Origin: Styela clava
Taxonomy: Eukaryota
DNA length: 64,000 bases
Direction: 5' to 3'
Assembly: GCF_964204865.1 (NCBI RefSeq)
Contig: NC_135259.1
Span: 5,394,001 to 5,458,000 of the forward strand
Below the pieces are notes generated by a model. That model was not told the DNA's origin, did no database searches, and saw nothing but the letters and a program-made list of their open reading frames with translations. Position numbers and translations under genes: made by a program. This document shows, piece after piece, positions 1-64,000 of the stretch. The first letter of the stretch is position 1. Each line of letters opens with the position of its first letter.

Positions 1-3000
1 TATAATTTCTCTTATATACGTCATCGAGCAGGTTGGAGATTTGAATAAATCATCGTTGCACTCAGCACGAGAAAGAAGTATAATGAACAGCTTTCAAATT
101 AGTTAAAATTAAATTAAATTACTTTCAAATTAGAAAACACTCCGTCCGGAAAAATTCGGGTTTTGTTTAGAGTGATTGAATTTATGCATTACTTGTAATG
201 GAATAAGAAAATGACTATTCTTCGTTAAATTTTAAACTATTTTTCTGTCCTTTATCTCTCTTTGAACTAAGAAGTGATATGCTTCGCATCATTACTCTCT
301 CGTTATGATGAATTGGGTCTATTAAGTATATGGTGAATATTATTACAATAAAGTTCCTATTTTTACACATTCATCACCCATGTGGTTTAAAATTGATGGG
401 TATTGCAAGCTAAGATGAAATGAAAGTTTTCGGAGAGTTTAGATAGCACCAACAATTGCAATGAATAATTAACGAACATATTCATTCGCCTATAGCCAAA
501 TTTGACTTTTATTGTTTTTCAAACTAAATTGCTATGTTAATTTCAAATCTACTATGTATTATAGTATATCGTACCTAATACATAATCGCCAGCAAGCCAC
601 TTCTAATTGACTACGATTTACCACATTTGACTTCGTTCAACACAGTGGCTTCCAACCGCTAGTTCTTTTTAATTGTAAATGGCTCAGCACACATATACCT
701 TAACGCAGAACTAAAGCGATTAACAAACAGTAAACCATCCAGCATATTGTGAACACACCATACATTTACATTGTCAGGTGTTCCGTGCAAAATAAGTGGC
801 CATAAAAACCGCGAAATAAATATTGAACTATTGTGTCACGATGGCACATTCCGCGCCTAGTCATACTCGTTCAAAGATTAGAAGTTTGTCAAATCAACTT
901 CGGTCTTCAATGTGACGTTACAAAATAAATGGCAAACGGGGTGGAATCAACATGAATTTTAGAGGACATATGGTAACATTTCAGAATTGGATTATATTTC
1001 AATCACCAATAAAGCAACGCTTTTGAATATCAAGATTAAAGTCAGCGCAGTGCGATTACCTTGCAGTGAATTCTGATTTAGTGTGAGCTATTGGCAGATA
1101 CGCCCCAATGTCACACTCAGTTCAAAAGTCGCAGAAATTCTGTTAAACCTGGCCTAGTTACGCAAGTCCTAACATTGTTTTACGCTACTAGTTTGTCCCG
1201 TTGGGCAGGAATATTGGAGACTGAACAATTAATATTTATGACATACTATCGGATATCTTTTATGTGGTTATTGCCATCCCATAAAATGATATTTCAAGGT
1301 TGAACATAGCGTGACCATTATTTGTCACCGTGTCATTTATTTTTAAATAAGTTTTATGTTCTCTATTTATGACTTTTGAGGTTGAACATATTAAATATCC
1401 GGATATGAATATGTTGACTGGTTTACAATATTGATATGCGCGTACCATATTATGGTCCAGCAGCAATATGCATCACTATGTAACGCTTCTACGAGTAACT
1501 TTCTTGCTTATTATAGATCCTACTGATGAAATATGCGACAAAATATGAAAATCAACACCTTTTTATTCCTCCATATAGCAATAGAATAACAAATATAATA
1601 CGAACATTGCAATTATGTCACCCCCCTTTCAGCTGATCTTCATTGGGTATGAACTTACGGTATATAGGTTTTTGCAATCTGCTAAAAATACCAATTGAAT
1701 CTCTACGATATGCTATATTAAAGGGTTAAGCCAAGGATTTCAAATAAGCTCGAGTTTAGTTCAAACTAAGTGTACATGATCCACTGCTACATAACTTTGA
1801 CAGGCAGATGGATAAAAGATTTACCTCGGCTAGATGCGGTTAAGATTGAATTTGTAATTGAGATTGATCTTTGACCCGTGACTTATCATCTTGACCTGGT
1901 TACTTTTTAACATGCCGAGATAAGTTATCTTCAAAATTTTTCTTGAAAAGTGTTATAAATAAGCGATAGTATTTCAAACATACTTTCAATTTGAAACCAA
2001 ATGCTTTCGAAACGTCTGTCCATCATGAAAAAAGTGTAAATTTTTAAATACAATGACTTTCTCATACTGTTAAGTTTACGTATTACGCTGAAATATGCAA
2101 CGTACCTTACACTTCCTTCCATTTTAATTTTACCATAAATTTCAATTTTACCATCTAAAAAGTTTTTATAACTATTGTGCAAGATTTATTATTGTAAATA
2201 ATTACTGTATTTTAGTATCTTTTTCTATAAAAAAAAAATTTCTGAAAATATGCACTCTCACCGTTCCTCACTGTTACAATACCTCAATTTATTTAAATCC
2301 TATCGACCATCAGCTGAATACAGTTGTTATTTGATCAGTACAATCGCCCACCTAAATCCGTCAACTGACAACTATTATTCAAGGCTTACCCCTTTTATCC
2401 GAAAAATAACACTTAGTTTTTGACAGGTCGCGAACAAAAGTGGGGCCATTCTTCATTATATCCAATTATCACGACGTTTTGTCCCAATTCTACGCTAAAA
2501 ATAATATTGCAAAATAAGTTGAATTTTCAGGTAATTGATGCATTTTCATACCAAAAATTAGATCAATTTCCCAACAAGCCTTGTAGTTAATAGCTATACT
2601 GTATTTACACTCAATTTTTAAATGAAATAGATATCAAAAATATTTGAAAGTTGCTATCACTTTTACTGATTCCGCATATCATGGATACGACAAATAAATT
2701 TTGGAAAAAGAACGGATACCTGTCTATTTGCTTACCATGCAATCAAACCCTGTTCTATTGTTACAAGAAGTCGATTCACTACAATACTAGGTGCATATTA
2801 TATGTTAAGAGATTATCCAATATTACAGTTTCAGAATATTATAATACATATTTTTTTTATGAGAATATGATCTACCTATAAGATTTTATTAAAAGTTGGA
2901 GCAATTGAATTTGCTGAGATAAACCATTATATCATAATACTAATTGTCCTCCGCCAATCTTATGCCATTAGATATCACTGTTTAAAAAAATCTCAAAACC

Positions 3001-3539
3001 TTTTTTCGATTAGTCAAGTTTGGCGTTTCTTTCCTGCATATGTATTTCTTATTTGCCGACGACAAAGCATGATGGGTGGTCTATATATATATCTATCAAA
3101 AGATTCAAAGCAATCACTTTCATTTCAACATTACATCATGCATGCATAATAGGTATCAGAACTGACTATAACACTTCATGCCTAATTTTCTCGTTTTTGT
3201 TTACACAACATCGACCTTTAAAAATTTTTTATTACCGGTATTTCTGTTCTGTGTATAATTGTGCAGTTTTAAACTAATAATCACATTGGAAAAATTTTAT
3301 AAATTGATTTGAAACTTACTCTTTGTAATAGACTTTATCTGTTTAGAGTCAGACAATTATATCGTTATAATGACTCCAATTGTTGCATTAGGCTGTTTAT
3401 TATAAAAACGTTTGCCAAGCTGTTAAGCCTCTTTTTTACAACTTCCTCTCTATAATCTGTTTTCTCAGCTACCGTTATTTGGCATCCCCTGTAATAAATC
3501 CATCAGTATGAATAAAAAACTCCGAGTGGATTCCGAATG

Positions 3540-5247
3540 TCGTGTTTTATCAATTCTATCAAGGAATGGACACAGAAGTATTTTTTATAGACACTGGTCA
3601 ATCAAAAGCTGCCTGCTCAATTTGTAATGAAACGTGTGCGGTGTTCAAAGAATATAATATGAAGAGACATTTTGTGGAGAAAATTTGACTTTGGCCAACA
3701 ATATCCGTCACAAAAACTGAAAATCGAGAAAGCAGATATGGTTGAAGAGCCGAAACGCAAACAGCGTTTTCATCTACCCATGCACAATCTGTGAAAGACT
3801 GCTCAGTTGACGCTATCAGCATTTTGTGTCCAGAAGTGAAGTCAAGAATCGAGCAATTCCCATGTCAAGGACAACTACCGTTTGTAGAATAGAAGCCATT
3901 GCTATCAACTTGCGAGAAAATCCGTTTATTACTGCAAATACATTCAAATGTTCCTCAATCTCTCCCTACGAAAGTACAGATGTATTTGACACAGCGCAGT
4001 CGCTGATTTTTATCGGGAATTGACGAACATTTTGCATAACAGAAGAATCGCTGTCCACGGAGAGTCGAAAAGGCACCGACTACCACAGAGTAAGATATAT
4101 TCGACAGTGTTATGCACGCTTTAGAAAAGTTCCAGTTATGCCTTGGTAAGGTCGTGAGTATAACAACAGATGGTGCGCCTTCATTGCGGGAGTTATCTGA
4201 ACTTATCAAAAGAATAAATGACAAGATTCAAGCTGATTACTCACTTCATAAAAGTCTATCATTTCACTGTATAATACATCAGGGAGGTCTTGCCAAGTCC
4301 TGGTTAGATTTCAAACATGTTATGACTCAAGTAGTACAAGCTTACGATTTCTCCGACCGTGTTAAAAAGAGTTTGGGAACTCAATAAAGAGATTGTCGTG
4401 TTTTTTTAATAAAAGATGTAGTCTCTGACTACTCTATCAAAGCACAGAATACAGAATGGATGTTTGATTTTCCATTTGCTACGGGTATTATGCAAAATAT
4501 GAATGAACTCAATAAAAAACTCCGAGGAAAAGGAGTGTTTGCTCAGGTTTTACATTTGGAGGTTAAATCATTTTAAGCAAAGTTAAAACTTCTTGCAAAA
4601 CAAATATCCAATGAAAGGTTTGCGCACTTTCCTCTCTTGAAAAGTCTGTTGACGTTATATCTGCAATAAAGTACATTGAACTTATCACAGGTCTGAGAGA
4701 AGAATTTTCCAGAAGATTTTCTGTTTTTAATGCTATGGAGCATGAATTTGATTTACGGAAGTTTTTATTATCATATGATGTTGAAACAGTTGCTGATGAG
4801 TTACCGGTGAAAGTCGTAGATCTCCAAACTGGCAATGCTTCGAAGAGCAATTTTGAAGCGGAATCTTTGATTGAGTTTTATGAATCGTTTCATCCAGGAA
4901 AATTTAAAAATGTGGAAGATTTTGCAAGAAAAATGTTTGTGATGTTTGCATCAACATAAATATGTTTCAAACTTTCACAAATATGGAATAAACGAAAGCA
5001 AAAACAGACTTCTTTTAACGAATTCAAACCCACAAGCTGTCTTAAGAATCAGCACAAGCAGCTTTGTGACTGAATCAAACAAGATTTTGGACGCATGTAG
5101 TAGACTACATCAGTCCCATTAATCATTGTGTCTGGGTATTTGCAAATTAACAGTTTTTTTATTCATATTGAGTATTGAGTCTTCGATCCAGTAACCAAGT
5201 CTGTCTGTTATTCGTACCTGGCCCACTCAGGAAATTGCCCACCCCTG
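3540..5247 (+). mobile_element. Decayed hAT DNA transposon (Buster/SPIN/GTF2IRD2-like transposase pseudogene)
   Basis: Frameshifted fragments read EWTQKYF..KAACSICNETCAVFKEYNMKRHF (zf-BED-like, ~3563-3672), SITTDGAPS and FHCIIHQ (ORF 4112-4387; catalytic D region and CxxH), and FARKMFVMFAST (ORF 4735-4959; dimerisation region). The element ends in a hAT-type terminus TTGCCCACCCCTG at 5235-5247. There are many stops and frameshifts, and no left TIR was found. Confidence 0.88.
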
Positions 5248-47797: not shown

Positions 47798-50700
47798 ATG
47801 CGAAGATTTGATTCATTGCTGCTATTGTCAGTGGCAATGACTTGTTTTCTGCAAGTCATCCGTGCTGATAGTAAGATTTTTTTATTTCAAAGTGATCTGA
47901 AATTTTGAGTGCATATATTTCCAGAATAATTCATTTCATTTTATACATTTTGTAAATGATGTACATACAGTTAAAAAATGCATTTACAAGAATACAAGTT
48001 TATGGAAATAATCAAATTTAAATATAATTCTTATTGTCATATAAAATAACCAATATAAGTTGCAATAAAATACTTTATAATTTTCAGGCTGCTATCCGCC
48101 TAAATTTGAGCACGGTTACGTCTCATCGTCCGAGTTTCCAATGTATGGTCGATACAGAATTGGAGCGGTTCTCTATTTCCAATGCAAAAGAGGCTACGAA
48201 ATGAAAGGAGACTATACTATTAGATGCAGATATGGAAATTCATGGGACAGAGAAATTCCAAGATGTTACGCTAAAATATCTGAAAGTAAGTTTGGATTTT
48301 GATCACTGGAACGTAAATATTGAAAATAATTTATATTCCCTGTGTCGTGACAAATTTATTTCGAAATATATCTTATTTTTTAGAATATTGTGAAAGCCCG
48401 AGTCGATTTTTCGGCGGTGAATATCATCCGGTTAAGCCTCAGTATCATTACAACGACAAGGTCTATTATCGATGTCCTGGGTATTCCTCAAGATACGTCT
48501 ACTCAACATGTAGTATGGAGGGTAATTGGAAAAAAGCTTCCAAATGCTACGGTGAGTTGCCAAATCAGATATACCTAATAGCAATAGTTATGAACGACCA
48601 TAAACTCAAATATTCTTATTGCCTATACTTCCATACAGATTTGAATGAAAAATTACCTAGTTTCTGAATTTAACACTCACAAACCCCCTTTAATTTCAAA
48701 TATAACAGATTATTGCAAGAAACCGGAAATGAACTACGGATACTACGAACCAATGAAACAGCACTATTACCATGGCGATAGTATTAAATATTATTGCAAT
48801 GATAAATATTATAAGTATCACGAAGGAGAAAAATATGAAATGTCAACTTGTGGTGAAGATGGATATTGGGATAAAAAGAAACCGATGTGTAAAAGTATGT
48901 TCGTTTTCAAACTTTTCAAAACCTAATAAATCTGATACTTGTATAATTTTATTTTGTTTTAAATATCCTGTTTGTATTCGTAGAATATTGTGAAGTTCCC
49001 GATTATAAAATGTTTCATCATCAACCGTACGGACGATCACGTTATGAACATGGCGAGAAGATGCAATATTACTGCGAAGAAGATTATTACAAACCTTCTA
49101 AATATAATTACCATGAATCAGAATGCATGTCCGATGGAAAATGGAATCGATCTCCATACAAATGTGAAAGTAAGAATATTGATTATTATTAAAAACTTAA
49201 CAAGCTGATAAACTATGCAACACCTTCTGATTGTTAACCCAAATACTCTTTTTCTGCCGCCGGCTATTAATTTAAATCAAACCTCTTGTTTGCTTATAAA
49301 TATTCAGAAGTTTTCAGCAATTTTACAGTAATTTTGAAAAATTGTATGATTTTGCGAAAACACCAATTTCCTATATGTTATTGTAATGTTACAACAACAT
49401 GCATTTAGATATTTATGATATCCATATTACGAACTGTGAATTTGATGCAATTATGGAATCTTTCGACCAGTTGCTATTAAACGCTATCCTATTTGTATAA
49501 CAGAGCGATGCACAGCTCCAGATTACAATGACTATTACCATATGGCCTATTCTAAAGAAGTTTATGGGTATGGAGAAAAAATGATGTATTCATGCAAGGA
49601 CGGATACTACAAACCCTCCGATTATGATTATTCATATGCGATGTGTAAATCCGATGGGAATTGGGACAAGAAGCCTTACAAATGCATGAGTAAGTTCACT
49701 GATAATAACTAGTTAGGATTAAAATAATTGTGAAAGAAACATATTGTGTATACGTTGAAGAAAATTTAAAATGTATATGATTTTAGTTTTGACATATTCG
49801 CATTCTAAATAACCAGATTCTCAAGTGAAAAAATATATCCGTTTAATTTTAGAATACTGCAGGGCACATAAAATGCAACACGGTAAATATCAGCCATTGA
49901 AAGATACGTACAAACATGGAGATAAAATGTATTACGAATGTGATTCCGGATATGAAATTTATTACAAAGAAGAAAAATACGAATATAATACTTGTAATAA
50001 ACATGGAATGTGGGATCGCATGACTCCGATGTGTAAAAGTGAGTAGTTCGAATTTTGTAAAATACCAACATACTAAGTATGTTTGAAATGTAACAAACTA
50101 ACTGATCTTTTTAGAATATTGCAAGGCACCACAAATAAGCTACGGATCATACAGTCCAAAGTCGAAATCCGGAAAATACAATGTTGGTGACCGTATGTAC
50201 TACAGTTGTAACGACGGGTATAAACTGTTTTATGGAGAAGATTGGTACGAGTACAATACATGCCAAAAAGGAGGACAATGGCGTTACAAAGAACCATCAT
50301 GCAAAAGTGCTGAAAGTATGGTTTGATTTTTATATCTGATATCATCAAAAAATTATACACTTTGTCGTATTCAACAATCCATTATTAAAATTAAATTTCG
50401 ACCTAATATCCAAAGCAGAAAGGACGATATTATAACTCAGAACTTCGAAAGTGGCGTGAATTATACGAATCATAAGAGATCTATGAGAGACAATTCGTTA
50501 TGAAAATGTTTGCGATACATTTTTTTTATTTTTGTCTCGTTATGTGTTCTCAGATGTGCAAATGTACGTTTCTCGAATTTTGTCTGCCAAAATCGGAGAA
50601 AGGAATAAGTATGCTATTCTAACACAGTATTACAAAATCACGGTAATAACGATTTCTTGTTTATTATTAAGAACATTGTGATCCACCTCATATGCCACAT

Positions 50701-53700
50701 GGAACTTATACTCCATCAAAGAGCAGATATTCAAACAATGACAAAGTATCTTACCAATGCGAAGATGGATACAAGCTTCACTATGATTTAGACTGGTTTG
50801 AATTCAGCACTTGCATGGAAACTGGGAAATGGGATTTTAAAGCCCCAAGTTGTATGGATAAGAAAATGCGTAAGTAGCATTTCATCGACTATGCAAAGTG
50901 GCGGGGTTAAAGAATATTGCTCTGGGAATTGGTGTAAAATCGCGTATAGAATACTAATAAGATTTGATCAATATAGATTATATTCACCTTATTGAGTGAA
51001 AAATTGAGATGGAGGTCCGAAATCATTGATATACTATTTTTAATTAAAATTCCAACATAAGCTAAATAAAACAAATTACAAGTTTATTTTAAAGTTCCGA
51101 GTCCATGGGAAAATTGTTAGTTATTTCTCTGAATTGGTTTTATTTAGATCAAGTATATTAGCCTTTATGTTAAAATTTGTAGACTACTGCAAGCAGCCGT
51201 ACATCGACCATGGATCTTATTCACCTATGAAGAAAATGTATAGCAAAGGAGATCGCATTTACTACAATTGTAAAGATGGGTACAAAATGTATTACGATGA
51301 AGACTGGTTTGAATTCAGCACATGTAATGATGATGGGAACTGGGATTATGAACCACCCAAATGCAAAGCAGTAATTGAGAGTAAGAATTGTTTTAATAAA
51401 ATGAATATTTTATGAAAAAAAACATTGGGTACAATCAAATTATTGCAATTATTGAAATCTAAGAATTTTGTTTTTGAAACCCTGTATTTTGTCGATACTC
51501 GCCTTGTGTCGCCTTGTGAATTATCTTTCTAGAATTGCTCTTACAAACTCCTGTAATGAAAAATCGTTCGAGCTAATGTTTCACGTAAAAAAATCTTTTT
51601 AAGAATATTGTTATCACGAGGAATACATGCATGGAGAATATAATCCAAAGATGAAACAATATAGTGCTGGAGATCGTATTTATTACGACTGTCACAAAGG
51701 ATACAGAATGAAATATGACGAAGACTGGTATGAATTCAGAACTTGTGGAAAAGATGGACTTTGGGATTTCAAACCACCTAAGTGCATGAAAGTACACAGT
51801 TACACAAGTAAGTAAACGATATTTATTGATAGGATATTATACACCACCGCAAATTCGTTCTTGGAAACGTAGACGCACACATACTTATTCCCAAGAAGAA
51901 ACAAGAGAGCTATGCTCAAATATATGGACACGTAGCGCCACATAATTTTGATGACGTCATAGATGAAAATTAAAGCCTTCTGGAGAATAATTCCATCTTC
52001 AACCACTGAAAATTTCAAAGCAATTGGTCCAGTAATCAAAGAGAAAAGTGTTTTCTCCAAAACGATACAAAGAACAAGACAACACAACAACAAAACGATC
52101 GTTATGTCCACTACGTATCCAATAAGAATGCACAAAAGCCTATTTCTCTCATTAAATATTACGCACTGACACATTTATTACAGGATAAGATGTATTTTCA
52201 ACATTTTCTTTTTTAGAATACTGCCACGCACCATATTTCATGAATGGAAATCTGCGTCCAATGAAGAATGCTTACAGTCACGGAGAGAAAGTCTATTACT
52301 ATTGTAAAGAAGGATACATTACATATTACAAAAACAACGAAGAATACAAATACAGCACTTGTAATCATGATGGAACCTGGGACAACCCAGCACCAATGTG
52401 CAAATCTATGTATAAAAGTGAGGCTATAAAATTTTGACTATATTTATTTTTGGTTGTTTTTCTGTGGAGACACGCACTTCTTGTTTTTATTTTCATTTAA
52501 TATTCTTATGTTTTCTGTTTAGACTACTGTTACGCCCCTGAAATGAAACATGGATCTTATAATCCCACAATGAAAATGTACAATACTGGAGACAGGTTGA
52601 GATATAAATGTGATTATGGATACAACATGTATTATGAAAACGAGAGATATGAATATACCACTTGTATGCGAGATGGGAATTGGGACAGAAAACACCCAAT
52701 GTGTAAAAGCAATAAAATGTGTAAGATGATTATCTATAATAAAGTCTAGTGGATACTAAAGTTAATTTCATTTGCGTTAGAATAAAGTTTACATTTAGAT
52801 ATTGAATAAATATAATATAAATATGACTGAGTTTATTGGCAAACATAAAATCTTTCTTTTTAAATTTCCCTAGTAACATTTTTCTCTAAACGAAGAACTT
52901 TTGTTTTTTTTTTCTTCGTTATGTCAAGAATTATTTCTAAAATATCCAGATTATTGCGACAAACCAATGATACAATACGGTATGTATAAACCAATGAAAA
53001 CAATGTACAATCCCGGTGATAGAATGTATTATTCATGTAAACAAGGATATCAACTTAAATATGGTAAAGATTGGTTTGAATACAACACATGTAATGATGA
53101 TGGAAAATGGAGATTTGAGGCACCAAAATGCATGAAGGCACATAAAAGTAAGACTTATTTGTTATGGATCAATTCAACATGAAATATATTTATTATCAAT
53201 GTAAATCTATCATTACAAACATATTTATACCATGACTTATGATGACGGTTTCTTTCTTTGATACTTTAATTAAATTGATGATGTGATAATTTTGGTCATA
53301 TTGATGTAGAATCAAATAAGAATGTAAGAAGCGATGTATTATTCTGTTCACAGGATATTGTGAATCCCCCATGATCAAACATGGGGATTACAGTCCCAAC
53401 AAAAAATATTATTCATACGGAGACAAAGTTTATTATAAATGTCACGGTGGATTCAAACTTTATTATGAAAATGATTGGTTTGAATACAGCACTTGTAAGG
53501 AAGGAGGATATTGGTATCCAAAAGAACCAGTCTGTAAAGAAGAAAAGATGAGTGAGTATTGAAAATAAGCAGTTGATCACCAATTATTCAAAATTTGAAA
53601 TATCATTTATATGACGTTGACAATAACGCATTCCTGTATTCTATCATTTTGTGTAATATATTAAAAGTGATTATTTCAAGTATAGAAATTTGGGTTAATA

Positions 53701-56061
53701 AATATTAACCGTACAAATACCAAAACACTAAATATTTACACTATTTAACCATTTTTTCGACTTCAGAATATTGCTACCCACCTGAGTATCACCACGGTTC
53801 TTTTAATCCAAAAATGCGAATGTATAGTCACGGTGAAAGAATGTATTACGAATGTGACTACGGATATAAAATGTATTATCATGACGAAGAATACGAATTT
53901 AACACTTGTATGGATGGGAAATGGAAAAAACAGGCACCAAAGTGCATGGACATGAAAAAAAGTATGTGAGATATTGTAGTATTTGTTAGGGGACAAATAT
54001 AATGAAAGTCGCTTACAATCCAGGATTTTCTGCAAACACCTCGACTTATTTGATTATTTTTTTTATTTGTGAAATGTTGAAATATATATTCCTCATATTT
54101 CAGCATAATAAATTACAATATCCTTTGGTTTACCAGAATATTGCAAGATGCCATCTATTATGTACGGTTCCTACCAACCAATGAGAAAAATGTACAGTTA
54201 TGGAGATAGAGTCTGGTACTCATGCAAAAGTGGTTACGTCATGCAATATCATGGTGATACATTTGAATATAGTTCATGCATGTCGGATGGAAATTGGGAT
54301 AAAAAAGCTCCAAAGTGCATGAAACGTGATATGAGTAAGTTTTTAACATAAACTGATTTTGGTTTAAAAAAATCTATTAGAATTAGACTCATCCTATTAT
54401 TCTTTGTTTACTACAGAATACTGCATGGCTCCTCATATGAAGCACGGTGAATATTATCCCATGAAATCACGATACAACGTTGGTGATAAGTTGTATTACA
54501 ACTGCAAGTCTGGTTATGATATGAGATATCATGAAACTAAATATCACTATTCAACCTGCAAATCTGATGGAAATTGGGATAACAAACATCCGATGTGTAT
54601 GGATATGAAGAAAAGTATGTTGTATTATAATGCAAAATCCTCAGATTTCAAATTTAAAACATTGTATATACAGAGGGGATAGAACTAAAAATCATAAAAG
54701 ATAATGATATGCCAATTTCTGTATCATTGATTATAATTTATGCCACAGTAGCTGAGTGTCTATTCTATCAAAAATTAAATATTGATGTACATAATTTGTG
54801 TCGATTTGAAAAAATTATTGAAAAAATTAATTTTTTTTTTATTTCAAATTTTGTATTTGCAGAATACTGTTCTGCACCGAAGGTCGATCACGCTGGCTAT
54901 TCTCCAATTAAAAATTATTACAAGTACGCTGATCGGATTTATATATCGTGTCACTATGGATATTACAAATCCTATTCAGGTTATCAAATGGAATATAGCT
55001 CATGTAAAGAAAATGGGAAATGGGATGTTATTCCAACCTGCAAAACTATGGCAAAAAGTAAGTTTTTCAGAAAATTAAATTGGACCAGATTAATACAAAT
55101 TATTAAAGCAAGCAATCTTCTGGCGCAATATTTCAAGTTTTACAAGAATTGCGTATTTTAATCATACATGTTGCTCAATCTTTTTCAGAAATTTTTACGC
55201 GTTTTTCTGATTTTCTCACTTTTAAACTAAAAAACCTCGGCAAGATTGATTAATGGATGATAAAACTCATATATATTTTCTGTGTATTCAGAATATTGCA
55301 AAGCCCCCGAACGTTCACACTATCATCATAAATCATATGCAAAAAAACAATATATGGAAGGAGAATGGATCAAATATGAATGTGATCACGGATATTATCG
55401 ACCTTCCAATATGAAATACAATTATGCCATATGTAAGAAAGACGGAACATGGACTGCTTTACCTTACAAGTGCAATAGTAAGTATTATTTAACAAAAAAT
55501 ATTAAACTTTAGTCTTCAGTATATAATAAATATTTCTGAAATTAAACTGTTGTATTGCTTTTGTATTCTAGGATATTGTATGTCGAATGATATGCGGTAC
55601 GGATCTTATAAGCCCATGAAGAAATACTATGCACATGGAGAAAGAGTTTCATATAAATGTTATGACGGCTATAACATGAAATATCAGAAGCAGAAATACC
55701 AGTACAGAACATGTCAGAATGATGGGGAATGGGATAACTATGCCCCGATTTGCATGAGTGAGTAAACTTTTCTTAAACTTGACTTTGTATAAATTGATAC
55801 CTCATAATAAAAATATAGACTTGTTCTTAATTATTACTTAAATAATAATATTTCCTAGTTGTTATTTATAATAATAAAGTAATTTTAAATGCTCAAATCA
55901 AAATAAACGATTGCCGTTTTTCAGAACCTACCCCATTATTTTGTTGCAGATTAAAAATAAAATTCAATAATTCCTCCATGATTCAACTTGTTTCAATTAA
56001 TAATTAATTTGAATACATCCTGCATGTACGTTTTATTTTCATTTCAGAAAGCCGGTACTAG
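47798..56061 (+). CDS. Secreted Tyr/Lys/Met/His-rich protein of 20 tandem sushi (CCP/SCR) modules, copy 1 (22 exons, ~1316 aa)
   Basis: Signal exon 47798-47870 (MRRFDSLLLLSVAMTCFLQVIRA). Then 20 phase-1/1 exons, each one module with C-x2-P..G..Y.C..GY..C...G.W....P.C: 48088-48285, 48384-48551, 48709-48894, 48984-49169, 49504-49689, 49853-50038, 50115-50315, 50672-50869, 51183-51380, 51604-51807, 52217-52417, 52523-52720, 52950-53147, 53354-53551, 53767-53961, 54137-54334, 54417-54614, 54863-55057, 55292-55477, 55572-55757. Terminal exon 56048-56061 (KSRY*). Total 3951 nt. No TM segment or protease domain. Confidence 0.93.
51900..52123 (+). mobile_element. Short family B element in a CCP gene intron
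   Basis: AACAAGAGAGCTATGCTCAAATATATGGACACG ... ATGTCCACTACGTATCCAATAA. Confidence 0.75.
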
Positions 56062-56616
56062 CTACGCCCAAAGCTGATGGGCGACGACATTGGAACATCA
56101 TAAAGCTTTATAATCAATTTGGTGACTTTATTATATTGTATAATTTGATATTATGTGATAATAATTGAGAGTAATAAAAAAAATGAATCATATTTTTTGT
56201 TCGTTTGAGTTTGTATTGAACAAAGTTTGTGTCAGATTTTGACGTATAGTAACCAGTAATTTCCAAGTTTTGTAACTTTTGCAAAATGACTTCCGCGTGG
56301 TATTGTTGGAATGAGATCGTTCCTGATAGCAAATTCCTCCCGCTACTTTAATACTAGATTAATTTTCAATTATCCGATTCAAGGTTTCCAAAACGTAATG
56401 GAGATTTTAGAGCAATATACCAAAATCGGTTTTTGATGATATTAAAACCATTTGCACACTTGTCTGGATTCCTAACAAATAGGACAACTCAAATAGGTAC
56501 AGTATTCCAAAATTTCTAAGCGCTACAAAAACAAAAGCTTTCACACTCCTAAAGCAAAATTGCACGTATTGAGATATTTTGAACTCAAAATCGGGACTAA
56601 TATTCTCGAGTTAGAC

Positions 56617-60165: not shown

Positions 60166-63100
60166 CTAGTAGCGATTACCTGAAATAAAAATCGAACATG
60201 TAAGCAGAATGTATGCAAAGTTACTATGTATCTAATGCTTTATGAAAAAATGATTTGAAGTATTATTTTTAATAAGCAACGATGTGCGTACGACAACTGC
60301 GAACATTTATTTAGTTGCTTAAACTTAAATATCTACAGTACGGCCTCCGTTCTAAATTATAAAGAAGAAAATACACCATGAAGTGAATTGAGTATCAAAA
60401 ATAATTTAGCTTCTTCAAACATAGTCTGAGTAAAGTTTACTCACTCATGCACATCGGGGCAGAATAATCCCACTCTCCGTCATTCTGACATGTTCTGTAC
60501 TGATATCTTTGCTTCTGATATCTCATGTAATATCCAGTATAACATTTATATGAAACTCTTTCTCCATGTTCGTAGTATTTCTTCATGGGCTCATAAGATC
60601 CATACCGCATACCATTCGACATGCAATATCCTAAAATTTAACAATTATGCAACAGTTTTATTTGAGAAAACTTATAAGATATTCTCAAAGACATATGATT
60701 AATATTTTGTTAAATAATACTTACTATTGCACTTGTAAGGTGAAGCAGTCCATGTTCCATCTTTCTTACATATGGCATAATTGTATTTCATATTGGAAGG
60801 TCGATAATATCCGTGATCACATTCATATTTGATCCATTCTCCTTCCATATATTGTTTCTTTGCATAGGATTTATGATGATAGTGTGAACGTTCGGGGGCT
60901 TTGCAATATTCTAAATACACAGAAGTTATATGAGTTTTATCATTCTTCAATTAATCATAATATTGTATATTAGTTAATGAAGTTTAATAAGTAAGAAAAA
61001 TAGAACATGTTAAAAAATCTGAAACTAGTGTGCAACAAGTATGGCTAAAATAAGCAATTCTGATAAATATGAAAAAATTGCACCATAAGACTGCTTGCTT
61101 TTATAGTTTGCATCAACTCGGGTAATTTAATCTTACTGGACTTACTTTTTGCCATAGATTTGCAGTTCGGAATAACATCCCATTTTCCGTTTTCTTTACA
61201 TGAGCTATATTCCATTTGATAACCTGAATATGATCTGTAATATCCATAGTGACAAGATATATAGACCCGATCATTGTACTTGTAATAATTTTTCATTGGA
61301 GAATAGTCAGCGTGATCGACCTTCGGTGCAGAACAGTATTCTGCAAATGTAAAAATAAGTTGGAATAAAGAATATTTTTTGATATTTTTTTAAATCTCCA
61401 AAAATAATGTGTTTGAACATAAAATGTTAGAATGAACAAGCACTCAACTTCAGTAACATAATTTAAGTTATAAAATTTGATAATGATGTTTTGAATTTTT
61501 AGTTCAAAGATTTTGTATCATAAAACAACATACTTTTCTTCATATCCATACACATCGGATGTTTGTTATCCCAATTTCCATCAGATTTGCAGGTGGAATA
61601 TTGATAATTATTTTCATGATATCTCATACCATAACCAGACTTGCAGTTGTAATACAACTTGTCACCAACGTTGTATCGTGATTTCATGGGATAATATTCA
61701 CCGTGCTTCATATAAGGTGCCATGCAGTATTCTATAGTAAAAGAAATAAATTATTAGGATGAGTTTAATCGATAATTTATACCAAAATCAATTTATGTTG
61801 AAAACTTACTCATATCACGTTTCATGCATTTTGGAGCTTTTTTATCCCAATTTCCATTCGACATGCATGAACTATATTCATATCTATCTCCATCATATTT
61901 CATGTAGTAACCACTTTTGCATGAATACCAGACTCTATCTCCATAGCTGTACATTTTTCTCATTGGTTGGTATGAACCATGCATGATATATGGCATCTGG
62001 CAATATTCTGTTAAAACCAGAAGATATTGCAAATTAGAACAGACGGAAGATTTTGACTCGTGTTTATAAATGAGTAAAATACAAACAAATGATTCGGTAT
62101 GTACAGTAAATTCCCGATCGTCAACAACTTTCTCATTATTTGCCTTAAAAGATTGATAACAAGTTGTTGTACGTACTTTTTTTCATGTCCATGCACTTTG
62201 GTGCCTTCTTCTTCCATTTTCCATCCATACAAGTGTTATATTCGTATTCTTCGTCATGATAATACATTTTATATCCGTAGTCACATTTGTAATACATTCT
62301 TTCACCGTGACTATACATTCGCATTTTTGGATAATACGAACCGTGGTGATAATCGGGTGGGTAGCAATATTCTGAAGTCGAAAAAAACTGGTTGAATTGT
62401 GTGAATATTTAGTGTTGTGGTATTTGTACGGTTAATGTTTATGAACCCAAATTTCTATACTTGAAATATTCACTTTTAATAAATTACACAAAATCGAAAG
62501 TCGAAAAAAAAGTTGGTTAAATTTGGGTGAATATTTAGGGTTTTGGCCTTCTTATTAAGCATAGAAGAAGTTTTATTATTATTGAAATCTCCAATTCTAA
62601 TTTAGTTAATCAAAACTAATAGAAATTCGTTATTGTCAACACCGGATGAATGGTATCTTAGTTTGATTTTGATCGATTTATGATCAACTACCAATATTTT
62701 CAATACTCACTCATCTTTTCTTCTTTACATACTGGTTCTTTGGGATACCAATATCCTCCTTCATTACAAGTGCTGTATTCAAACCAATCATTGTCATAAT
62801 AAAGTTTGTACCCTCTGTGACATTTGTAATAAACTTTTTCTCCGTATGAATAATATTGTTGGTTGGGATTGTAATTACCATGTTTGATCTTAGGAGAGTC
62901 ACAATATTCTGTGAAAAGATTATTGATTTTACTAGAAATTAAGGAAAACAATCTAAACGCTAAATAAAACATGTTTTTTTTATATTACAGGTTTCTAATT
63001 GATTTTGCATAGATTTGACTAAAATAATCACTTTATCAATTTGTCAAAAAATGTCTTGATGTTTCACGATTTTAAATATCTTGATAACTAGAAATCTCTA

Positions 63101-64000
63101 TAGATAATCAATGTAATTTATGTTTATCAATCCATGACAATTAAGTCTCACTTTTTTGTGCCTTCATGCATACTGGTGCTTTGTATCTCCATTTTCCATC
63201 ATCATTACATGTGTTGTATTCAAACCAATCTTTACCATATTTAAGTTGATATCCTTGTTTACATGAATAATACATTCTATCACCAGGATTGTACATTCTT
63301 TTCATTGGTTTATACATACCGTATTGTATCATTGGTTTGTCGCAATAATCTGAAAAATTTGAGATAGAATGCTTCACATATTATAAGAAAATGTAAAGCT
63401 TTTCATCTTGTAGAAAATGTTATATTGGAAATTTGATGAAAAAAAGGGTGAGTAAAAAATTATCTCTGCTAATAAAATTAGTAATCTATATGTTTGATTA
63501 TTTATCATTTTAATTTAAACTTTTTTAAATTGAATATATTCCAATAGTTTTTAGAAATGTATTGGATATCTTACACATTTTGTTGCTTTTACACATTGGG
63601 TGTTTTCTGTCCCAATTTCCATCTTGCATACAAGTAGTATATTCATATCTCTCGTTTTCATAATACATGTTGTATCCATAATCACATTTATATCTCAACC
63701 TGTCTCCAGAGTTGTACATTTTCATTGTGGGATAATAAGATCCATGTTTCATTTGAGGAGCGTGACAGTAGTCTAAACACAAAATATCAGAACAAAAATA
63801 CGAGAATGAAAAACGAATCAACTAGTACAGTTCAATTTCAATTAAAAATTATATAATCAATGTATAGTCTTACTTTTATACATAGATTTGCACATTGGTG
63901 CAGGATTATCCCAGGTTCCATCATAATTACAAGTGCTGTATTTGTATTCTTTGTTTTTGTAATATGTCATGTATCCATCTTTGCAATAGTAGTAGACTTT
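60166..64000 (-). CDS. Tyr-rich tandem sushi/CCP protein, copy 2 (3' part; 5' end lies beyond the window)
   Basis: Exons colinear with modules 11-20 of copy 1: >64000-63874, 63772-63575, 63349-63152, 62908-62711, 62371-62177, 62007-61810, 61731-61534, 61340-61146, 60910-60725, 60630-60445, and terminal 60179-60166 (SNRY*). Complete exons have identical lengths to copy 1, with intact frames and splice sites. Confidence 0.92.

What the first reader, a model, noticed from the sequence alone, without database searches (positions are those of the whole stretch)
47798..56061. A 20-module sushi polymer loaded with Tyr, Lys, Met and His: candidate DOPA-type matrix, adhesive or metal-binding protein on a complement-regulator scaffold
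Seen: signal peptide + 20 CCP modules + 4-aa tail, with no TM or catalytic domain. The modules keep the 4 Cys/Trp/Pro core but are flooded with Tyr: by hand count 12/66 residues in exon 53354-53551, and 10 Tyr + 7 Met of 66 in 54417-54614. YY, KY and YK pairs recur. Module 1 looks like an ordinary CCP, while modules 2-20 are the biased type. Known: ordinary CCP modules have only a few Tyr; complement factor H also has 20 CCPs; Tyr/Lys-paired precursors are typical of DOPA/TOPA-modified marine adhesive, tanning and blood-cell proteins; aromatic- and Met-rich composition is also typical of amino-acid storage proteins. Inference: a folded beads-on-a-string scaffold repurposed to display oxidisable Tyr for cross-linking or metal binding, or for storage. 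Automated pipelines would probably mislabel it factor H-like or SVEP1-like.
Basis: partly seen in the sequence, partly recalled or inferred. Interest (0 to 1): 0.88.

Follow-up and report, generated by a model that had tools for sequence, protein, structure and literature searches.

The report
Tyrosine-loaded sushi-repeat protein, sea squirt
A sea-squirt (Styela clava) gene encodes a secreted chain of 20 sushi/CCP domains in which one residue in six is tyrosine and the usual Leu/Ile/Val are almost gone; it is expressed, conserved and triplicated, looks like a cross-linkable matrix protein rather than a complement regulator, but its chemistry and tissue are still untested.

Summary
Window 47798-56061 (+) is a 22-exon gene: a signal-peptide exon, 20 phase-1 exons that each encode one Pfam Sushi module, and a 14-nt tail exon. 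Eight introns are confirmed by spliced contigs in four RNA-like runs.

The mature protein (1292 aa, about 158 kDa, pI 8.8) is 16.5% Tyr, 13.1% Lys, 6.3% Met and 4.2% Leu+Ile+Val. The 150 best multi-CCP proteins of a 1.84-billion library average 4.1±1.2, 3.4, 1.2 and 16.9%. Other CCP arrays in the same genome are ordinary.

The gene is one of five in Styela clava:
- Three are intact 20-module copies (A here, B convergent and partly in the window, C 32 kb on). Pairwise dN/dS is 0.12-0.26 and 96% of Tyr are retained.
- One is a 10-CCP paralog that NCBI names "C4b-binding protein alpha-like / factor H-like".
- One is an older colinear copy on another chromosome.

A module is predicted to fold as a canonical CCP. 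About 6 of 9.4 Tyr per module sit at columns that are variable or polar in ordinary CCPs.

My best reading (0.45) is an oxidatively cross-linkable secreted matrix or adhesive protein. No modification, tissue or partner was shown. YY/KY/YK pairs are no commoner than composition predicts.

The parts
47798..47870 (+). Exon 1: start codon and 24-residue signal peptide (hydrophobic core LLLLSVAMTCFLQV), phase-1 donor
   Evidence: Conserved with the same donor in paralogs B and C (93-97% nt). Signal peptide judged by inspection, not by a predictor.
48088..48285 (+). Exon 2 = CCP1, the most ordinary module (9 Tyr, Leu/Ile/Val retained)
   Evidence: Pfam Sushi 52.4 bits. AG/GT phase 1.
48384..48551 (+). 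Exon 3 = CCP2 (short, 55 aa)
   Evidence: Pfam Sushi 25.3 bits.
48709..48894 (+). Exon 4 = CCP3 (13 Tyr, 11 Lys of 61)
48984..49169 (+). Exon 5 = CCP4
49504..49689 (+). Exon 6 = CCP5
49853..50038 (+). Exon 7 = CCP6
50115..50315 (+). Exon 8 = CCP7 (an alternative in-frame donor lies at 50306)
   Evidence: The 201-nt form keeps GT in B and C. Not covered by laid reads.
50672..50869 (+). Exon 9 = CCP8
   Evidence: Joint 50869>51183 in three runs.
51183..51380 (+). Exon 10 = CCP9
51604..51807 (+). Exon 11 = CCP10
   Evidence: Joint 51807>52217.
52217..52417 (+). Exon 12 = CCP11
   Evidence: Joints 51807>52217 and 52417>52523.
52523..52720 (+). Exon 13 = CCP12
52950..53147 (+). Exon 14 = CCP13
   Evidence: Joint 52720>52950.
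53354..53551 (+). Exon 15 = CCP14 (12 Tyr); the module that was modelled
   Evidence: AlphaFold2 pLDDT 89.4. Foldseek matches to FH, CD46 and CR2 CCPs, TM 0.72-0.80.
53767..53961 (+). Exon 16 = CCP15
   Evidence: Joints 53551>53767 and 53961>54137.
54137..54334 (+). Exon 17 = CCP16
54417..54614 (+). Exon 18 = CCP17 (10 Tyr, 7 Met)
   Evidence: Joint 54334>54417.
54863..55057 (+). Exon 19 = CCP18
   Evidence: Contigs.
55292..55477 (+). Exon 20 = CCP19
   Evidence: Joint 55477>55572.
55572..55757 (+). Exon 21 = CCP20
   Evidence: A 338-nt contig of run X5 spans exons 20-21 with 0 differences.
56048..56061 (+). Exon 22: tail (K)SRY plus TAG stop
   Evidence: Equivalent mini-exons end SNRY and NNRY in B and C, with Arg codons CGG, CGC and CGT. 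Contig depth in bin 56000-56199 in runs X2 and X3.
56173..56178 (+). Candidate polyadenylation signal AATAAA
   Evidence: Sequence only; inferred.
60166..64000 (-). 3' half of convergent paralog B (CCP12-CCP20 plus tail mini-exon 60166-60179); it runs off the window
   Evidence: The full gene, read from L013, is intact at 1315 aa and 18.1% Tyr. 31 of 37 variant letters in the laid RNA contigs equal B's base, so B and/or C are transcribed too.

Best explanation
The gene encodes a secreted, basic, roughly 158-kDa rod of 20 disulfide-locked CCP modules. It has been compositionally remodelled, and amplified to three near-identical copies, to carry a very high density of oxidisable and nucleophilic side chains: 213 Tyr, 169 Lys, 82 Met and 50 His.

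The most likely role is an extracellular structural or adhesive matrix precursor, in the tunic or its cuticle, the holdfast, or a haemocyte-released wound or tanning material. Tyrosinase, phenoloxidase or haem peroxidase would cure it into an insoluble network. Tyr would be converted to DOPA, dityrosine or halotyrosine, and Lys and His would act as cross-link partners. The CCP fold would serve only as a protease-resistant beads-on-a-string carrier, as the EGF repeats do in mussel foot protein 2.

Shown: gene structure, transcription and splicing, CCP identity and predicted fold, the extreme and selected composition, and the gene family.

Inferred: secretion (signal peptide by inspection), surface exposure of the extra Tyr (from column mapping, not from coordinates), every chemical modification, and the tissue.
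For: - Composition: Tyr 16.5, Lys 13.1, Met 6.3 and Leu+Ile+Val 4.2% in A; Tyr is 18.1% in B and C. The 150 best multi-CCP proteins give 4.1±1.2, 3.4±2.1, 1.2±0.5 and 16.9±1.9%. Same-genome CCP arrays on C10 and C16 have 4.2-4.7% Tyr.
- Position of the Tyr: 9.4 per module against 2.9 in background. Of these, 6.05 lie at columns that are neither canonical-aromatic nor aliphatic-core. One such column is the near-invariant Gly of GYxLxG, which is Tyr in 79% of modules.
- Fold: predicted to be kept (pLDDT 89.4; TM 0.72-0.80 to solved CCPs).
- Physical properties: pI 8.8-8.9, GRAVY -1.3, a single N-glycosylation sequon, no anchor.
- Selection: dN/dS 0.12-0.26. Tyr is 96% and Met 94% conserved across A, B and C. 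Changes run towards Tyr (F>Y 9, H>Y 8, N>Y 5 columns). Exons are 89-99% identical while introns are 48-92%.
- Dosage: three intact copies plus two older paralogs with intermediate composition.
- Transcription: A, and B and/or C, are transcribed and spliced.
- Enzymes in the genome: several tyrosinase-domain loci, and at least 11 full-length single-ORF animal haem peroxidase genes.
- Precedent in this species: Styela clava haemocytes make styelin D, a peptide with multiple DOPA residues (PMC3039461).
Against: - No modified residue, tissue, cell type or partner was observed. The sequencing runs are coded, so stage and tissue are unknown.
- Contig depths on the exons are low (1-25). Three further runs of the species hold almost none of the gene.
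- Tyr-Lys adjacency, often stressed for DOPA adhesives, is at chance level.
- The Met enrichment is not explained by DOPA chemistry.
- No tyrosinase or peroxidase gene lies near the cluster. The window's neighbours are an amidase-like gene and an LCCL-repeat gene.
- Some of the Tyr excess replaces core hydrophobics (column 12) or sits at canonical aromatic columns, so not all Tyr can be reactive.
Confidence: 0.45

Rival explanations
1. It is a complement-type or other immune recognition or regulatory protein, such as a soluble RCA-like regulator or a pattern-binding opsonin. It would work through CCP-mediated protein or glycan binding. The odd composition would tune binding and would not be a substrate for chemistry.
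For: The architecture is CCP-only, and 20 modules is the number in factor H. The best structural and sequence matches are RCA proteins. NCBI names the adjacent paralog C4BP-alpha-like and factor H-like. The S. clava genome paper reports expanded complement-type genes, found by BLAST, that are up-regulated at metamorphosis (PMC7540406).
Against: Similarity to FH, CR1 and FXIII-B is generic: 12-14.5 bits per module, against 65-101 within the family. No such composition appears among the 150 best multi-CCP proteins. The paralogs are under purifying, composition-preserving selection, not diversifying selection. Apart from the neighbouring S. clava paralog (P0062), no relative showed up in the listed best 150 of 1.84 billion representatives, or among word-sharing candidates in 5.8 billion clusters.
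Confidence: 0.18
2. It is a non-covalent organiser of the cellulose tunic. Exposed Tyr faces on 20 tandem modules would stack on glucose rings, as type-A carbohydrate-binding modules do, and would bundle or coat cellulose microfibrils. The Lys residues would bind sulfated glycans.
For: There is a high density of Tyr at non-core columns on a rigid repeated scaffold. The protein is basic. The host makes a leathery cellulose tunic (PMC7540406). Earlier first-reader notes in this genome list sushi modules joined to CBM2-like and GH9 modules (s1-817627; unchecked).
Against: There is no similarity to any CBM family. Met and His enrichment are unexplained.
Confidence: 0.12
3. It is a metal-binding or redox-buffer protein of blood cells or plasma. 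It would bind Fe, V or Cu through Tyr/DOPA, His and Met, or act as a sacrificial sink for peroxidase-derived oxidants. Tyr, Met, His, Trp and Lys are the side chains such oxidants attack first.
For: Exactly the oxidisable residues are enriched, and inert aliphatics are depleted. Met is 94% conserved. The genome holds a large haem-peroxidase repertoire. DOPA-containing, highly aromatic blood-cell proteins such as ferreascidin are known in stolidobranch ascidians (PMC3039461).
Against: MxM and MxxM motifs are not enriched (5 and 4 observed against 5.1 and 5.2 expected). There are no His clusters. There is no evidence of blood-cell expression.
Confidence: 0.1
4. It is an amino-acid storage or yolk-type protein.
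For: The composition is strongly skewed towards Tyr, Lys, Met and His, and there are several gene copies.
Against: It almost lacks Leu, Ile and Val, which are also essential. It holds 80 Cys in a protease-resistant fold. Individual positions are conserved (96% of Tyr columns), not only the overall composition.
Confidence: 0.03

Closest known systems
Mussel foot protein 2 (mfp-2): tandem EGF-like repeats bearing DOPA, the cohesive matrix protein of byssal plaques (from general knowledge; not retrieved here)
   Same: Both are secreted and basic, and both are a tandem array of small disulfide-locked modules. In both, the fold acts as a carrier for Tyr that can be oxidised. Both belong to multi-gene families.
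   Different: The scaffold differs (CCP, not EGF) and the phylum differs (chordate). The Tyr load is far higher here (16-18%). Met is strongly enriched and aliphatics are almost eliminated. DOPA is not demonstrated here.
RCA-family complement regulators (factor H, C4BP alpha, CR1, CD46)
   Same: The architecture is CCP-only, with one module per phase-1 exon and 20 modules as in factor H. The predicted module superposes on FH, CD46 and CR2 CCPs (TM 0.72-0.80).
   Different: Similarity at sequence level is only generic (about 12 bits per module). Composition is about 10 SD away for Tyr. No orthology was detected. There is no TM or GPI signal and no oligomerisation tail.
Styela clava XP_039261768.1 / XP_077973294.1 ('C4b-binding protein alpha chain-like', 'complement factor H-like'); P0062 and P0151
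   Same: It lies in the same gene cluster, 20 kb downstream on the same chromosome, and has the same module types. It is Tyr/Lys/His-rich (12.0% Tyr, 9.8% Lys) and is the only compositional look-alike in the library.
   Different: It has 10 CCPs, not 20. It keeps normal Leu/Ile/Val (14.6%) and has almost no Met. It is 30-53% identical per module.
DOPA/TOPA peptides and aromatic proteins of ascidian blood cells (styelin D of S. clava, plicatamide, ferreascidin, tunichromes)
   Same: The animal group is the same, and for styelin D the species is too. These are Tyr-rich, basic molecules whose Tyr are enzymatically hydroxylated (PMC3039461).
   Different: Those are small peptides or a roughly 10-kDa protein without CCP folds. 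No sequence relationship was tested or is expected.
Coagulation factor XIII B chain (10 sushi domains), beta2-glycoprotein I
   Same: These are soluble, sushi-only carrier proteins. FXIII-B has the highest per-module profile score among solved chains (145 bits for 10 modules).
   Different: Their composition is ordinary. They are vertebrate plasma proteins with known partners.

Membership tests
Sushi/CCP/SCR domain (Pfam PF00084) | Profile match above the curated gathering score | tested here: met
   All 20 modules score 25.3-52.4 bits against a cut-off of 20.7.
Sushi/CCP/SCR domain (Pfam PF00084) | Four invariant Cys, the conserved Trp before Cys4, and Pro after Cys1 | tested here: met
   C2, C29, C47, C60 and W53 are invariant in 20 of 20 modules. 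The Pro after Cys1 (profile column 5) is present in 84% of the 19 biased modules (CCP2-20).
Sushi/CCP/SCR domain (Pfam PF00084) | Beta-sandwich CCP fold | tested here: met
   AlphaFold2 model of CCP14: pLDDT 89.4, six strands. Foldseek top hits are all CCPs, rmsd 1.7-2.1 A. This is a prediction only.
Sushi/CCP/SCR domain (Pfam PF00084) | One module per exon with phase 1-1 boundaries, typical of animal CCP genes | tested here: met
   Eight junctions confirmed by spliced contigs.
RCA complement regulators (factor H / C4BP / CR1) | Closer sequence relationship to RCA members than to CCPs in general (orthology) | tested here: not met
   11.8-14.5 bits per module to CR1, FH and FXIII-B, with no preference for FH. 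The library's best hits are giant generic CCP proteins at 11-26 bits per module.
RCA complement regulators (factor H / C4BP / CR1) | Ordinary CCP surface composition | tested here: not met
   per module, Tyr 9.4 vs 2.9, Lys 6.7 vs 2.1, Leu+Ile+Val 2.3 vs 8.3.
RCA complement regulators (factor H / C4BP / CR1) | C3b/C4b binding with decay-accelerating or cofactor activity | not testable with these tools
   Needs biochemical assays with S. clava C3.
DOPA-type adhesive / quinone-tanning precursor proteins | Secreted, basic, with Tyr at 10-20 mol% or more | tested here: met
   Signal peptide by inspection. pI 8.8-8.9 and Tyr 16.5-18.1%.
DOPA-type adhesive / quinone-tanning precursor proteins | Tyr flanked by Lys/Arg more often than chance | tested here: not met
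   KY 30 vs 27.8, YK 24 vs 27.8, [KR]Y z=1.7, Y[KR] z=-1.3. This is a frequent feature of such proteins, not a strictly defining one.
DOPA-type adhesive / quinone-tanning precursor proteins | Post-translational Tyr hydroxylation or cross-linking in the native protein | not testable with these tools
   Needs mass spectrometry or redox-cycling (NBT) staining.
DOPA-type adhesive / quinone-tanning precursor proteins | Expression in a gland, epidermis or blood cell together with tyrosinase or peroxidase | tested here: inconclusive
   The gene is transcribed in 5 RNA-like runs of 2 studies and nearly absent from 3 runs of another, but run identities are coded. The enzymes exist in the genome, unlinked to the cluster.
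Type-A cellulose-binding modules | Planar strip of about 3 exposed aromatic residues matching the glucose spacing | not tested

The most novel reading that the evidence does not exclude
This is a chordate-invented material protein. A complement-type CCP rod would be converted into a curing polymer that binds tunic cellulose through its Tyr faces. The animal's expanded haem-peroxidase and tyrosinase set would then lock it in place through DOPA, dityrosine or halotyrosine, and possibly Met-Lys sulfilimine bonds. It would be the first folded-domain, oxidatively cured structural protein described in the vertebrate sister group, and a molecular basis for the leathery tunic or holdfast of an invasive fouling species.
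Probability: 0.25. Interest if true: 0.8.

Novelty: new variant of a known kind. Interest (0 to 1): 0.6.

Why it matters
If these proteins are cured matrix or adhesive components, three things follow:
- They would give a sequence-defined handle on how ascidians build and harden the tunic or holdfast. That question has been tied to DOPA/TOPA chemistry for decades without a structural protein precursor in hand.
- They would be a second, independent case, after mussel mfp-2, of a small disulfide module recruited as a carrier for reactive Tyr.
- They would offer a recombinant-friendly modular scaffold for bio-inspired adhesives.

There is also a practical annotation point. CCP-only genes of this kind are named factor H, C4BP or CR1-like by homology pipelines. 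That may inflate reported "complement expansions" in tunicate genomes.

Tried and rejected
- **AT-bias as the cause of the composition: rejected.** Phe, Ile and Asn, which are also AT-rich codons, are low (1.7, 1.7 and 4.3%). Other CCP arrays of the same genome are ordinary.
- **Enriched Tyr-Lys pairing: rejected.** The pairs occur at shuffle expectation.
- **Cu(I) "Mets motif" reading of the Met excess: rejected.** MxM and MxxM are at expectation.
- **Thyroid-hormone precursor (proto-thyroglobulin) idea: set aside.** The S. clava precursor has been identified experimentally as a Tg1-domain protein (PMC12992692). Three runs of the species hold almost none of this gene. Iodination as a tunic scleroprotein remains possible.
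- **Orthologue search.**
  - A profile of the 20 modules against 1.84 billion representatives gave only generic giant CCP proteins plus the S. clava paralog P0062.
  - P0062 against 5.8 billion clusters found only itself.
  - A single module found no word-sharing candidate of 36-114 aa.
  - Full-length models of A, B, C and E were not among the best 150, although they should score above 1000 bits. They are therefore apparently not in that library. I could not establish why.
- **Literature search.** Six searches, using combinations of sushi, tyrosine-rich, DOPA, ascidian/Styela, tunic/proteome and adhesive, found no description of such a protein.
- **Linked enzymes: none found.** Window ORFs near the gene give amidase and LCCL hits only. 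The spacers between the paralogs give nothing.
  - Run names, tissues and stages are coded.
  - Model coordinates are not exposed, so solvent accessibility of Tyr was inferred from column mapping only.
  - The joined full-length protein was never sent to a search, fold or look-up tool. Exons were searched one by one by reference. The joined CDS was used only inside scripts, for composition and dN/dS.

Full report
**Gene structure**

The window is AT-rich animal DNA, 30-38% G+C in 2-kb windows. Between 48090 and 55753 the + strand holds 20 open frames with the C..C..C..W..C pattern of CCP modules. Each frame is bounded by AG and GT in phase 1.

With a 73-nt first exon (ATG at 47798) and a 14-nt last exon (56048-56061), they join into one uninterrupted 3951-nt reading frame of 1316 codons. 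The joining was done only inside a script. The first exon encodes a typical hydrophobic signal peptide (by inspection). The last gives the tail K-S-R-Y-stop. There is no transmembrane stretch and no other domain.

Every one of the 20 modules passes Pfam's curated threshold for Sushi/PF00084, with 25-52 bits against 20.7.

**Transcription**

Contigs of four public RNA-like runs of the same organism were laid on 50400-56399. They skip exactly eight of the predicted introns with GT..AG ends. Several contigs match gene A without a single difference; one is 338 nt long and spans exons 20-21. The model is therefore transcribed and spliced as predicted.

Of the variant letters in the other contigs, 31 of 37 equal the base of paralog B and 28 of 37 that of C. 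At least one of those copies is expressed as well.

Run identities are coded, so stage and tissue are unknown. Five RNA-like runs from two studies hold 10-21% of the stretch's sampled words; four of them were laid. Three runs of another study hold next to none.

**Organism and gene family**

The only compositional look-alike in the protein library, P0062, is NCBI XP_039261768.1, "C4b-binding protein alpha chain-like [Styela clava]". Its cluster mate XP_077973294.1 is named "complement factor H-like". That protein sits on a contig of 22,500,630 bases, which is exactly the length of the window's contig C13. Its modules are encoded 20 kb downstream of the window gene. Earlier follow-up notes of this scan also name the genome Styela clava.

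A search of the whole assembly with the module profile shows a family:
- Gene A is the window gene (+ strand).
- Gene B is convergent, and its last ten exons lie at window 60166-64000 (- strand).
- Gene D is the 10-CCP protein above.
- Gene C lies 32 kb further on (+ strand).
- Gene E is an older paralog on contig C6. It is broadly colinear with A at 37-66% identity per module.

A, B and C are all intact at 1315-1316 aa. All 42 splice sites are kept, and the tail mini-exons end KSRY, SNRY and NNRY.

**Is the composition really unusual?**

Yes. The mature protein A is 16.5% Tyr, 13.1% Lys, 6.3% Met and 3.9% His, with only 0.9% Leu, 1.7% Ile and 1.5% Val. B and C reach 18.1% Tyr.

The 150 highest-scoring multi-CCP proteins among 1.84 billion representatives average Tyr 4.1±1.2, Lys 3.4±2.1, Met 1.2±0.5 and Leu+Ile+Val 16.9±1.9%. 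Apart from paralog D (12.0% Tyr), the richest has 6.4% Tyr.

Other CCP arrays of the same genome are ordinary. On C10 and C16, Tyr is 4.2-4.7% and Leu+Ile+Val 15-18%. Two small loci are intermediate. Genome AT-bias is therefore not the cause. Phe, Ile and Asn, which are equally AT-rich in codons, are in fact low.

**Where the extra residues sit**

I aligned 3197 background CCP modules and the 19 biased modules (CCP2-20) to one profile. Between Cys1 and Cys4 the counts per module are:

| Residue(s) | This protein | Background |
|---|---|---|
| Tyr | 9.4 | 2.9 |
| Met | 3.4 | 0.64 |
| Lys | 6.7 | 2.1 |
| Leu+Ile+Val | 2.3 | 8.3 |

About 3.2 Tyr occupy the canonical aromatic columns. About 6 lie at columns that are variable or polar in ordinary CCPs. 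One of these is the near-invariant Gly of the GYxLxG motif, which is Tyr in 79% of modules.

Met takes over part of the aliphatic core columns (1.0 per module). It is also added at non-core columns (2.4 per module).

A module modelled with AlphaFold2 on the 20-module alignment is confident (pLDDT 89.4) and all-beta. It superposes on solved CCPs of factor H, CD46, CR2 and others at TM 0.72-0.80. The fold is thus predicted to survive the remodelling.

**Selection**

By Nei-Gojobori, dN/dS is 0.26 (A-B), 0.21 (A-C) and 0.12 (B-C), with dS of 0.13-0.22.

Of A's 213 Tyr, 204 (96%) are Tyr in all three genes. That is as conserved as Gly and Pro, and close to Cys and Trp. Met is 94% conserved. The differences run towards Tyr in B and C: F>Y in 9 columns, H>Y in 8, N>Y in 5.

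Exons of A and B/C are 89-99% identical, while the introns between them are only 48-92% identical. This fits purifying selection.

The family shows a gradient. E has Tyr 10.9, Met 7.2 and Leu+Ile+Val 7.9%. D has Tyr 12.2, Met 0.6 and Leu+Ile+Val 12.6%. A has 16.2% Tyr within modules.

**Other sequence properties**

The mature protein is about 158 kDa, with pI 8.8-8.9, GRAVY -1.3 and one N-glycosylation sequon. YY, KY and YK pairs occur at the frequency expected from composition, so their recurrence carries no extra information. MxM and MxxM motifs are not enriched. YM is strongly avoided, at 2 against 13.5 expected.

**Interpretation**

The protein is a bona fide CCP polymer, but nothing ties it to complement regulators beyond the domain type. 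Its profile scores 12 bits per module on human factor H and CR1, and 14.5 on factor XIII B, against 65-101 bits on family members. No orthologue appeared in the two large protein libraries. The 20-module count is shared with its own paralogs, not inherited from factor H.

Several features are what one expects of a structural or adhesive precursor made to be oxidatively cured:
- secretion;
- a basic, highly hydrophilic chain;
- extreme and position-conserved Tyr with abundant Lys and His;
- near-loss of inert aliphatics;
- lack of glycosylation sites;
- maintenance of three near-identical copies.

The closest functional analogue is mussel mfp-2, which has tandem EGF modules bearing DOPA (from general knowledge).

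The species demonstrably hydroxylates Tyr in haemocyte peptides; styelin D has multiple DOPA residues (PMC3039461). Its genome carries several tyrosinase-domain loci and at least eleven full-length, apparently intronless animal haem peroxidase genes. None of these is linked to the cluster.

I put this reading at 0.45. The rivals are an immune or complement-type binder (0.18), a non-covalent cellulose organiser of the tunic (0.12), a metal or redox buffer (0.10) and storage (0.03).

The Met enrichment is unexplained by DOPA chemistry. Peroxidase-driven Met-Lys sulfilimine bonds, or an oxidant-sink role, are ideas only.

A thyroid-hormone-precursor role is unlikely. The S. clava precursor has been identified experimentally as a Tg1-domain protein (PMC12992692).

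**Literature**

Six full-text searches found no description of a Tyr-rich sushi polymer in ascidians or in marine adhesives. Sushi domains turn up only incidentally in limpet and green-mussel adhesive gene lists. The known Ciona adhesive proteins have vWA, EGF-like and VWC-like domains (PMC12817120). The S. clava genome paper counts expanded "complement" genes by BLAST, including 16 "CR1" genes (PMC7540406). CCP-only genes such as these could be among them, but I could not check that.

**Limits**

- The joined full-length protein was not sent to any search, fold or look-up tool. Exons were searched one at a time by reference.
- Tissue and stage of the RNA runs are hidden.
- No chemistry can be tested in silico.

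**Verdict**

This is a new, strongly derived variant of a known kind: CCP-repeat secreted proteins, and folded-module Tyr-rich matrix precursors. It is lineage-restricted as far as the searched libraries show. Interest 0.6.

Noticed in passing
window 51900-52130 (intron 11 of gene A): A high-copy, transcribed repeat. Contig depth is 2000-4500 in all four RNA-like runs, against 1-25 on the exons, with many rearranged joints and loose ends. The overlapping ORF 51800-52174(-) has no Pfam hit.
   Followed up: partly
window 60166-64000 (-), continuing to G000:C13:5462341 (L013): Convergent paralog B, tail to tail with gene A and 4.1 kb from it. It is intact, with 18.1% Tyr.
   Followed up: yes
G000:C13:5470500-5477000 (L015) and 5481000-5490800 (L014): The cluster continues with D, a 10-CCP gene that NCBI names C4BP-alpha-like / factor H-like (12% Tyr), and with C, a third intact 20-CCP copy. 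C is 96.7% identical in protein to B.
   Followed up: yes
G000:C6:2596349-2608885 (-) (L016, L017): Older, broadly colinear paralog E with about 19 modules. It is the most Met-rich of the family (7.2% Met, 10.9% Tyr, 10.9% Lys).
   Followed up: partly
G000:C1:22.52-22.54 Mb and 20.55 Mb; C17:10.57-10.60 and 13.16-13.18 Mb; C4:15.61 Mb: At least eleven full-length animal haem peroxidase matches (about 550-563 bits, profile positions 2-526) lie in single open frames of 853-1029 aa. They appear to be intronless genes in tandem clusters, which suggests an expanded peroxidase family.
   Followed up: no
G000:C2:18468000-18477900 (L022) and C8:16298000-16307900 (L024): Small CCP loci with intermediate composition (Tyr 8.7-11%, Lys about 10%). 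They may be more distant members of the same Tyr/Lys-rich lineage.
   Followed up: no
   Followed up: partly
window 56048-56061; B at window 60166-60179; C at L014:8946-8959: A conserved 14-nt terminal mini-exon encodes x-[S/N]-R-Y-stop. The Arg codon differs in all three genes (CGG, CGC, CGT), so the C-terminal Arg-Tyr appears to be selected. Its purpose is unknown.
   Followed up: partly
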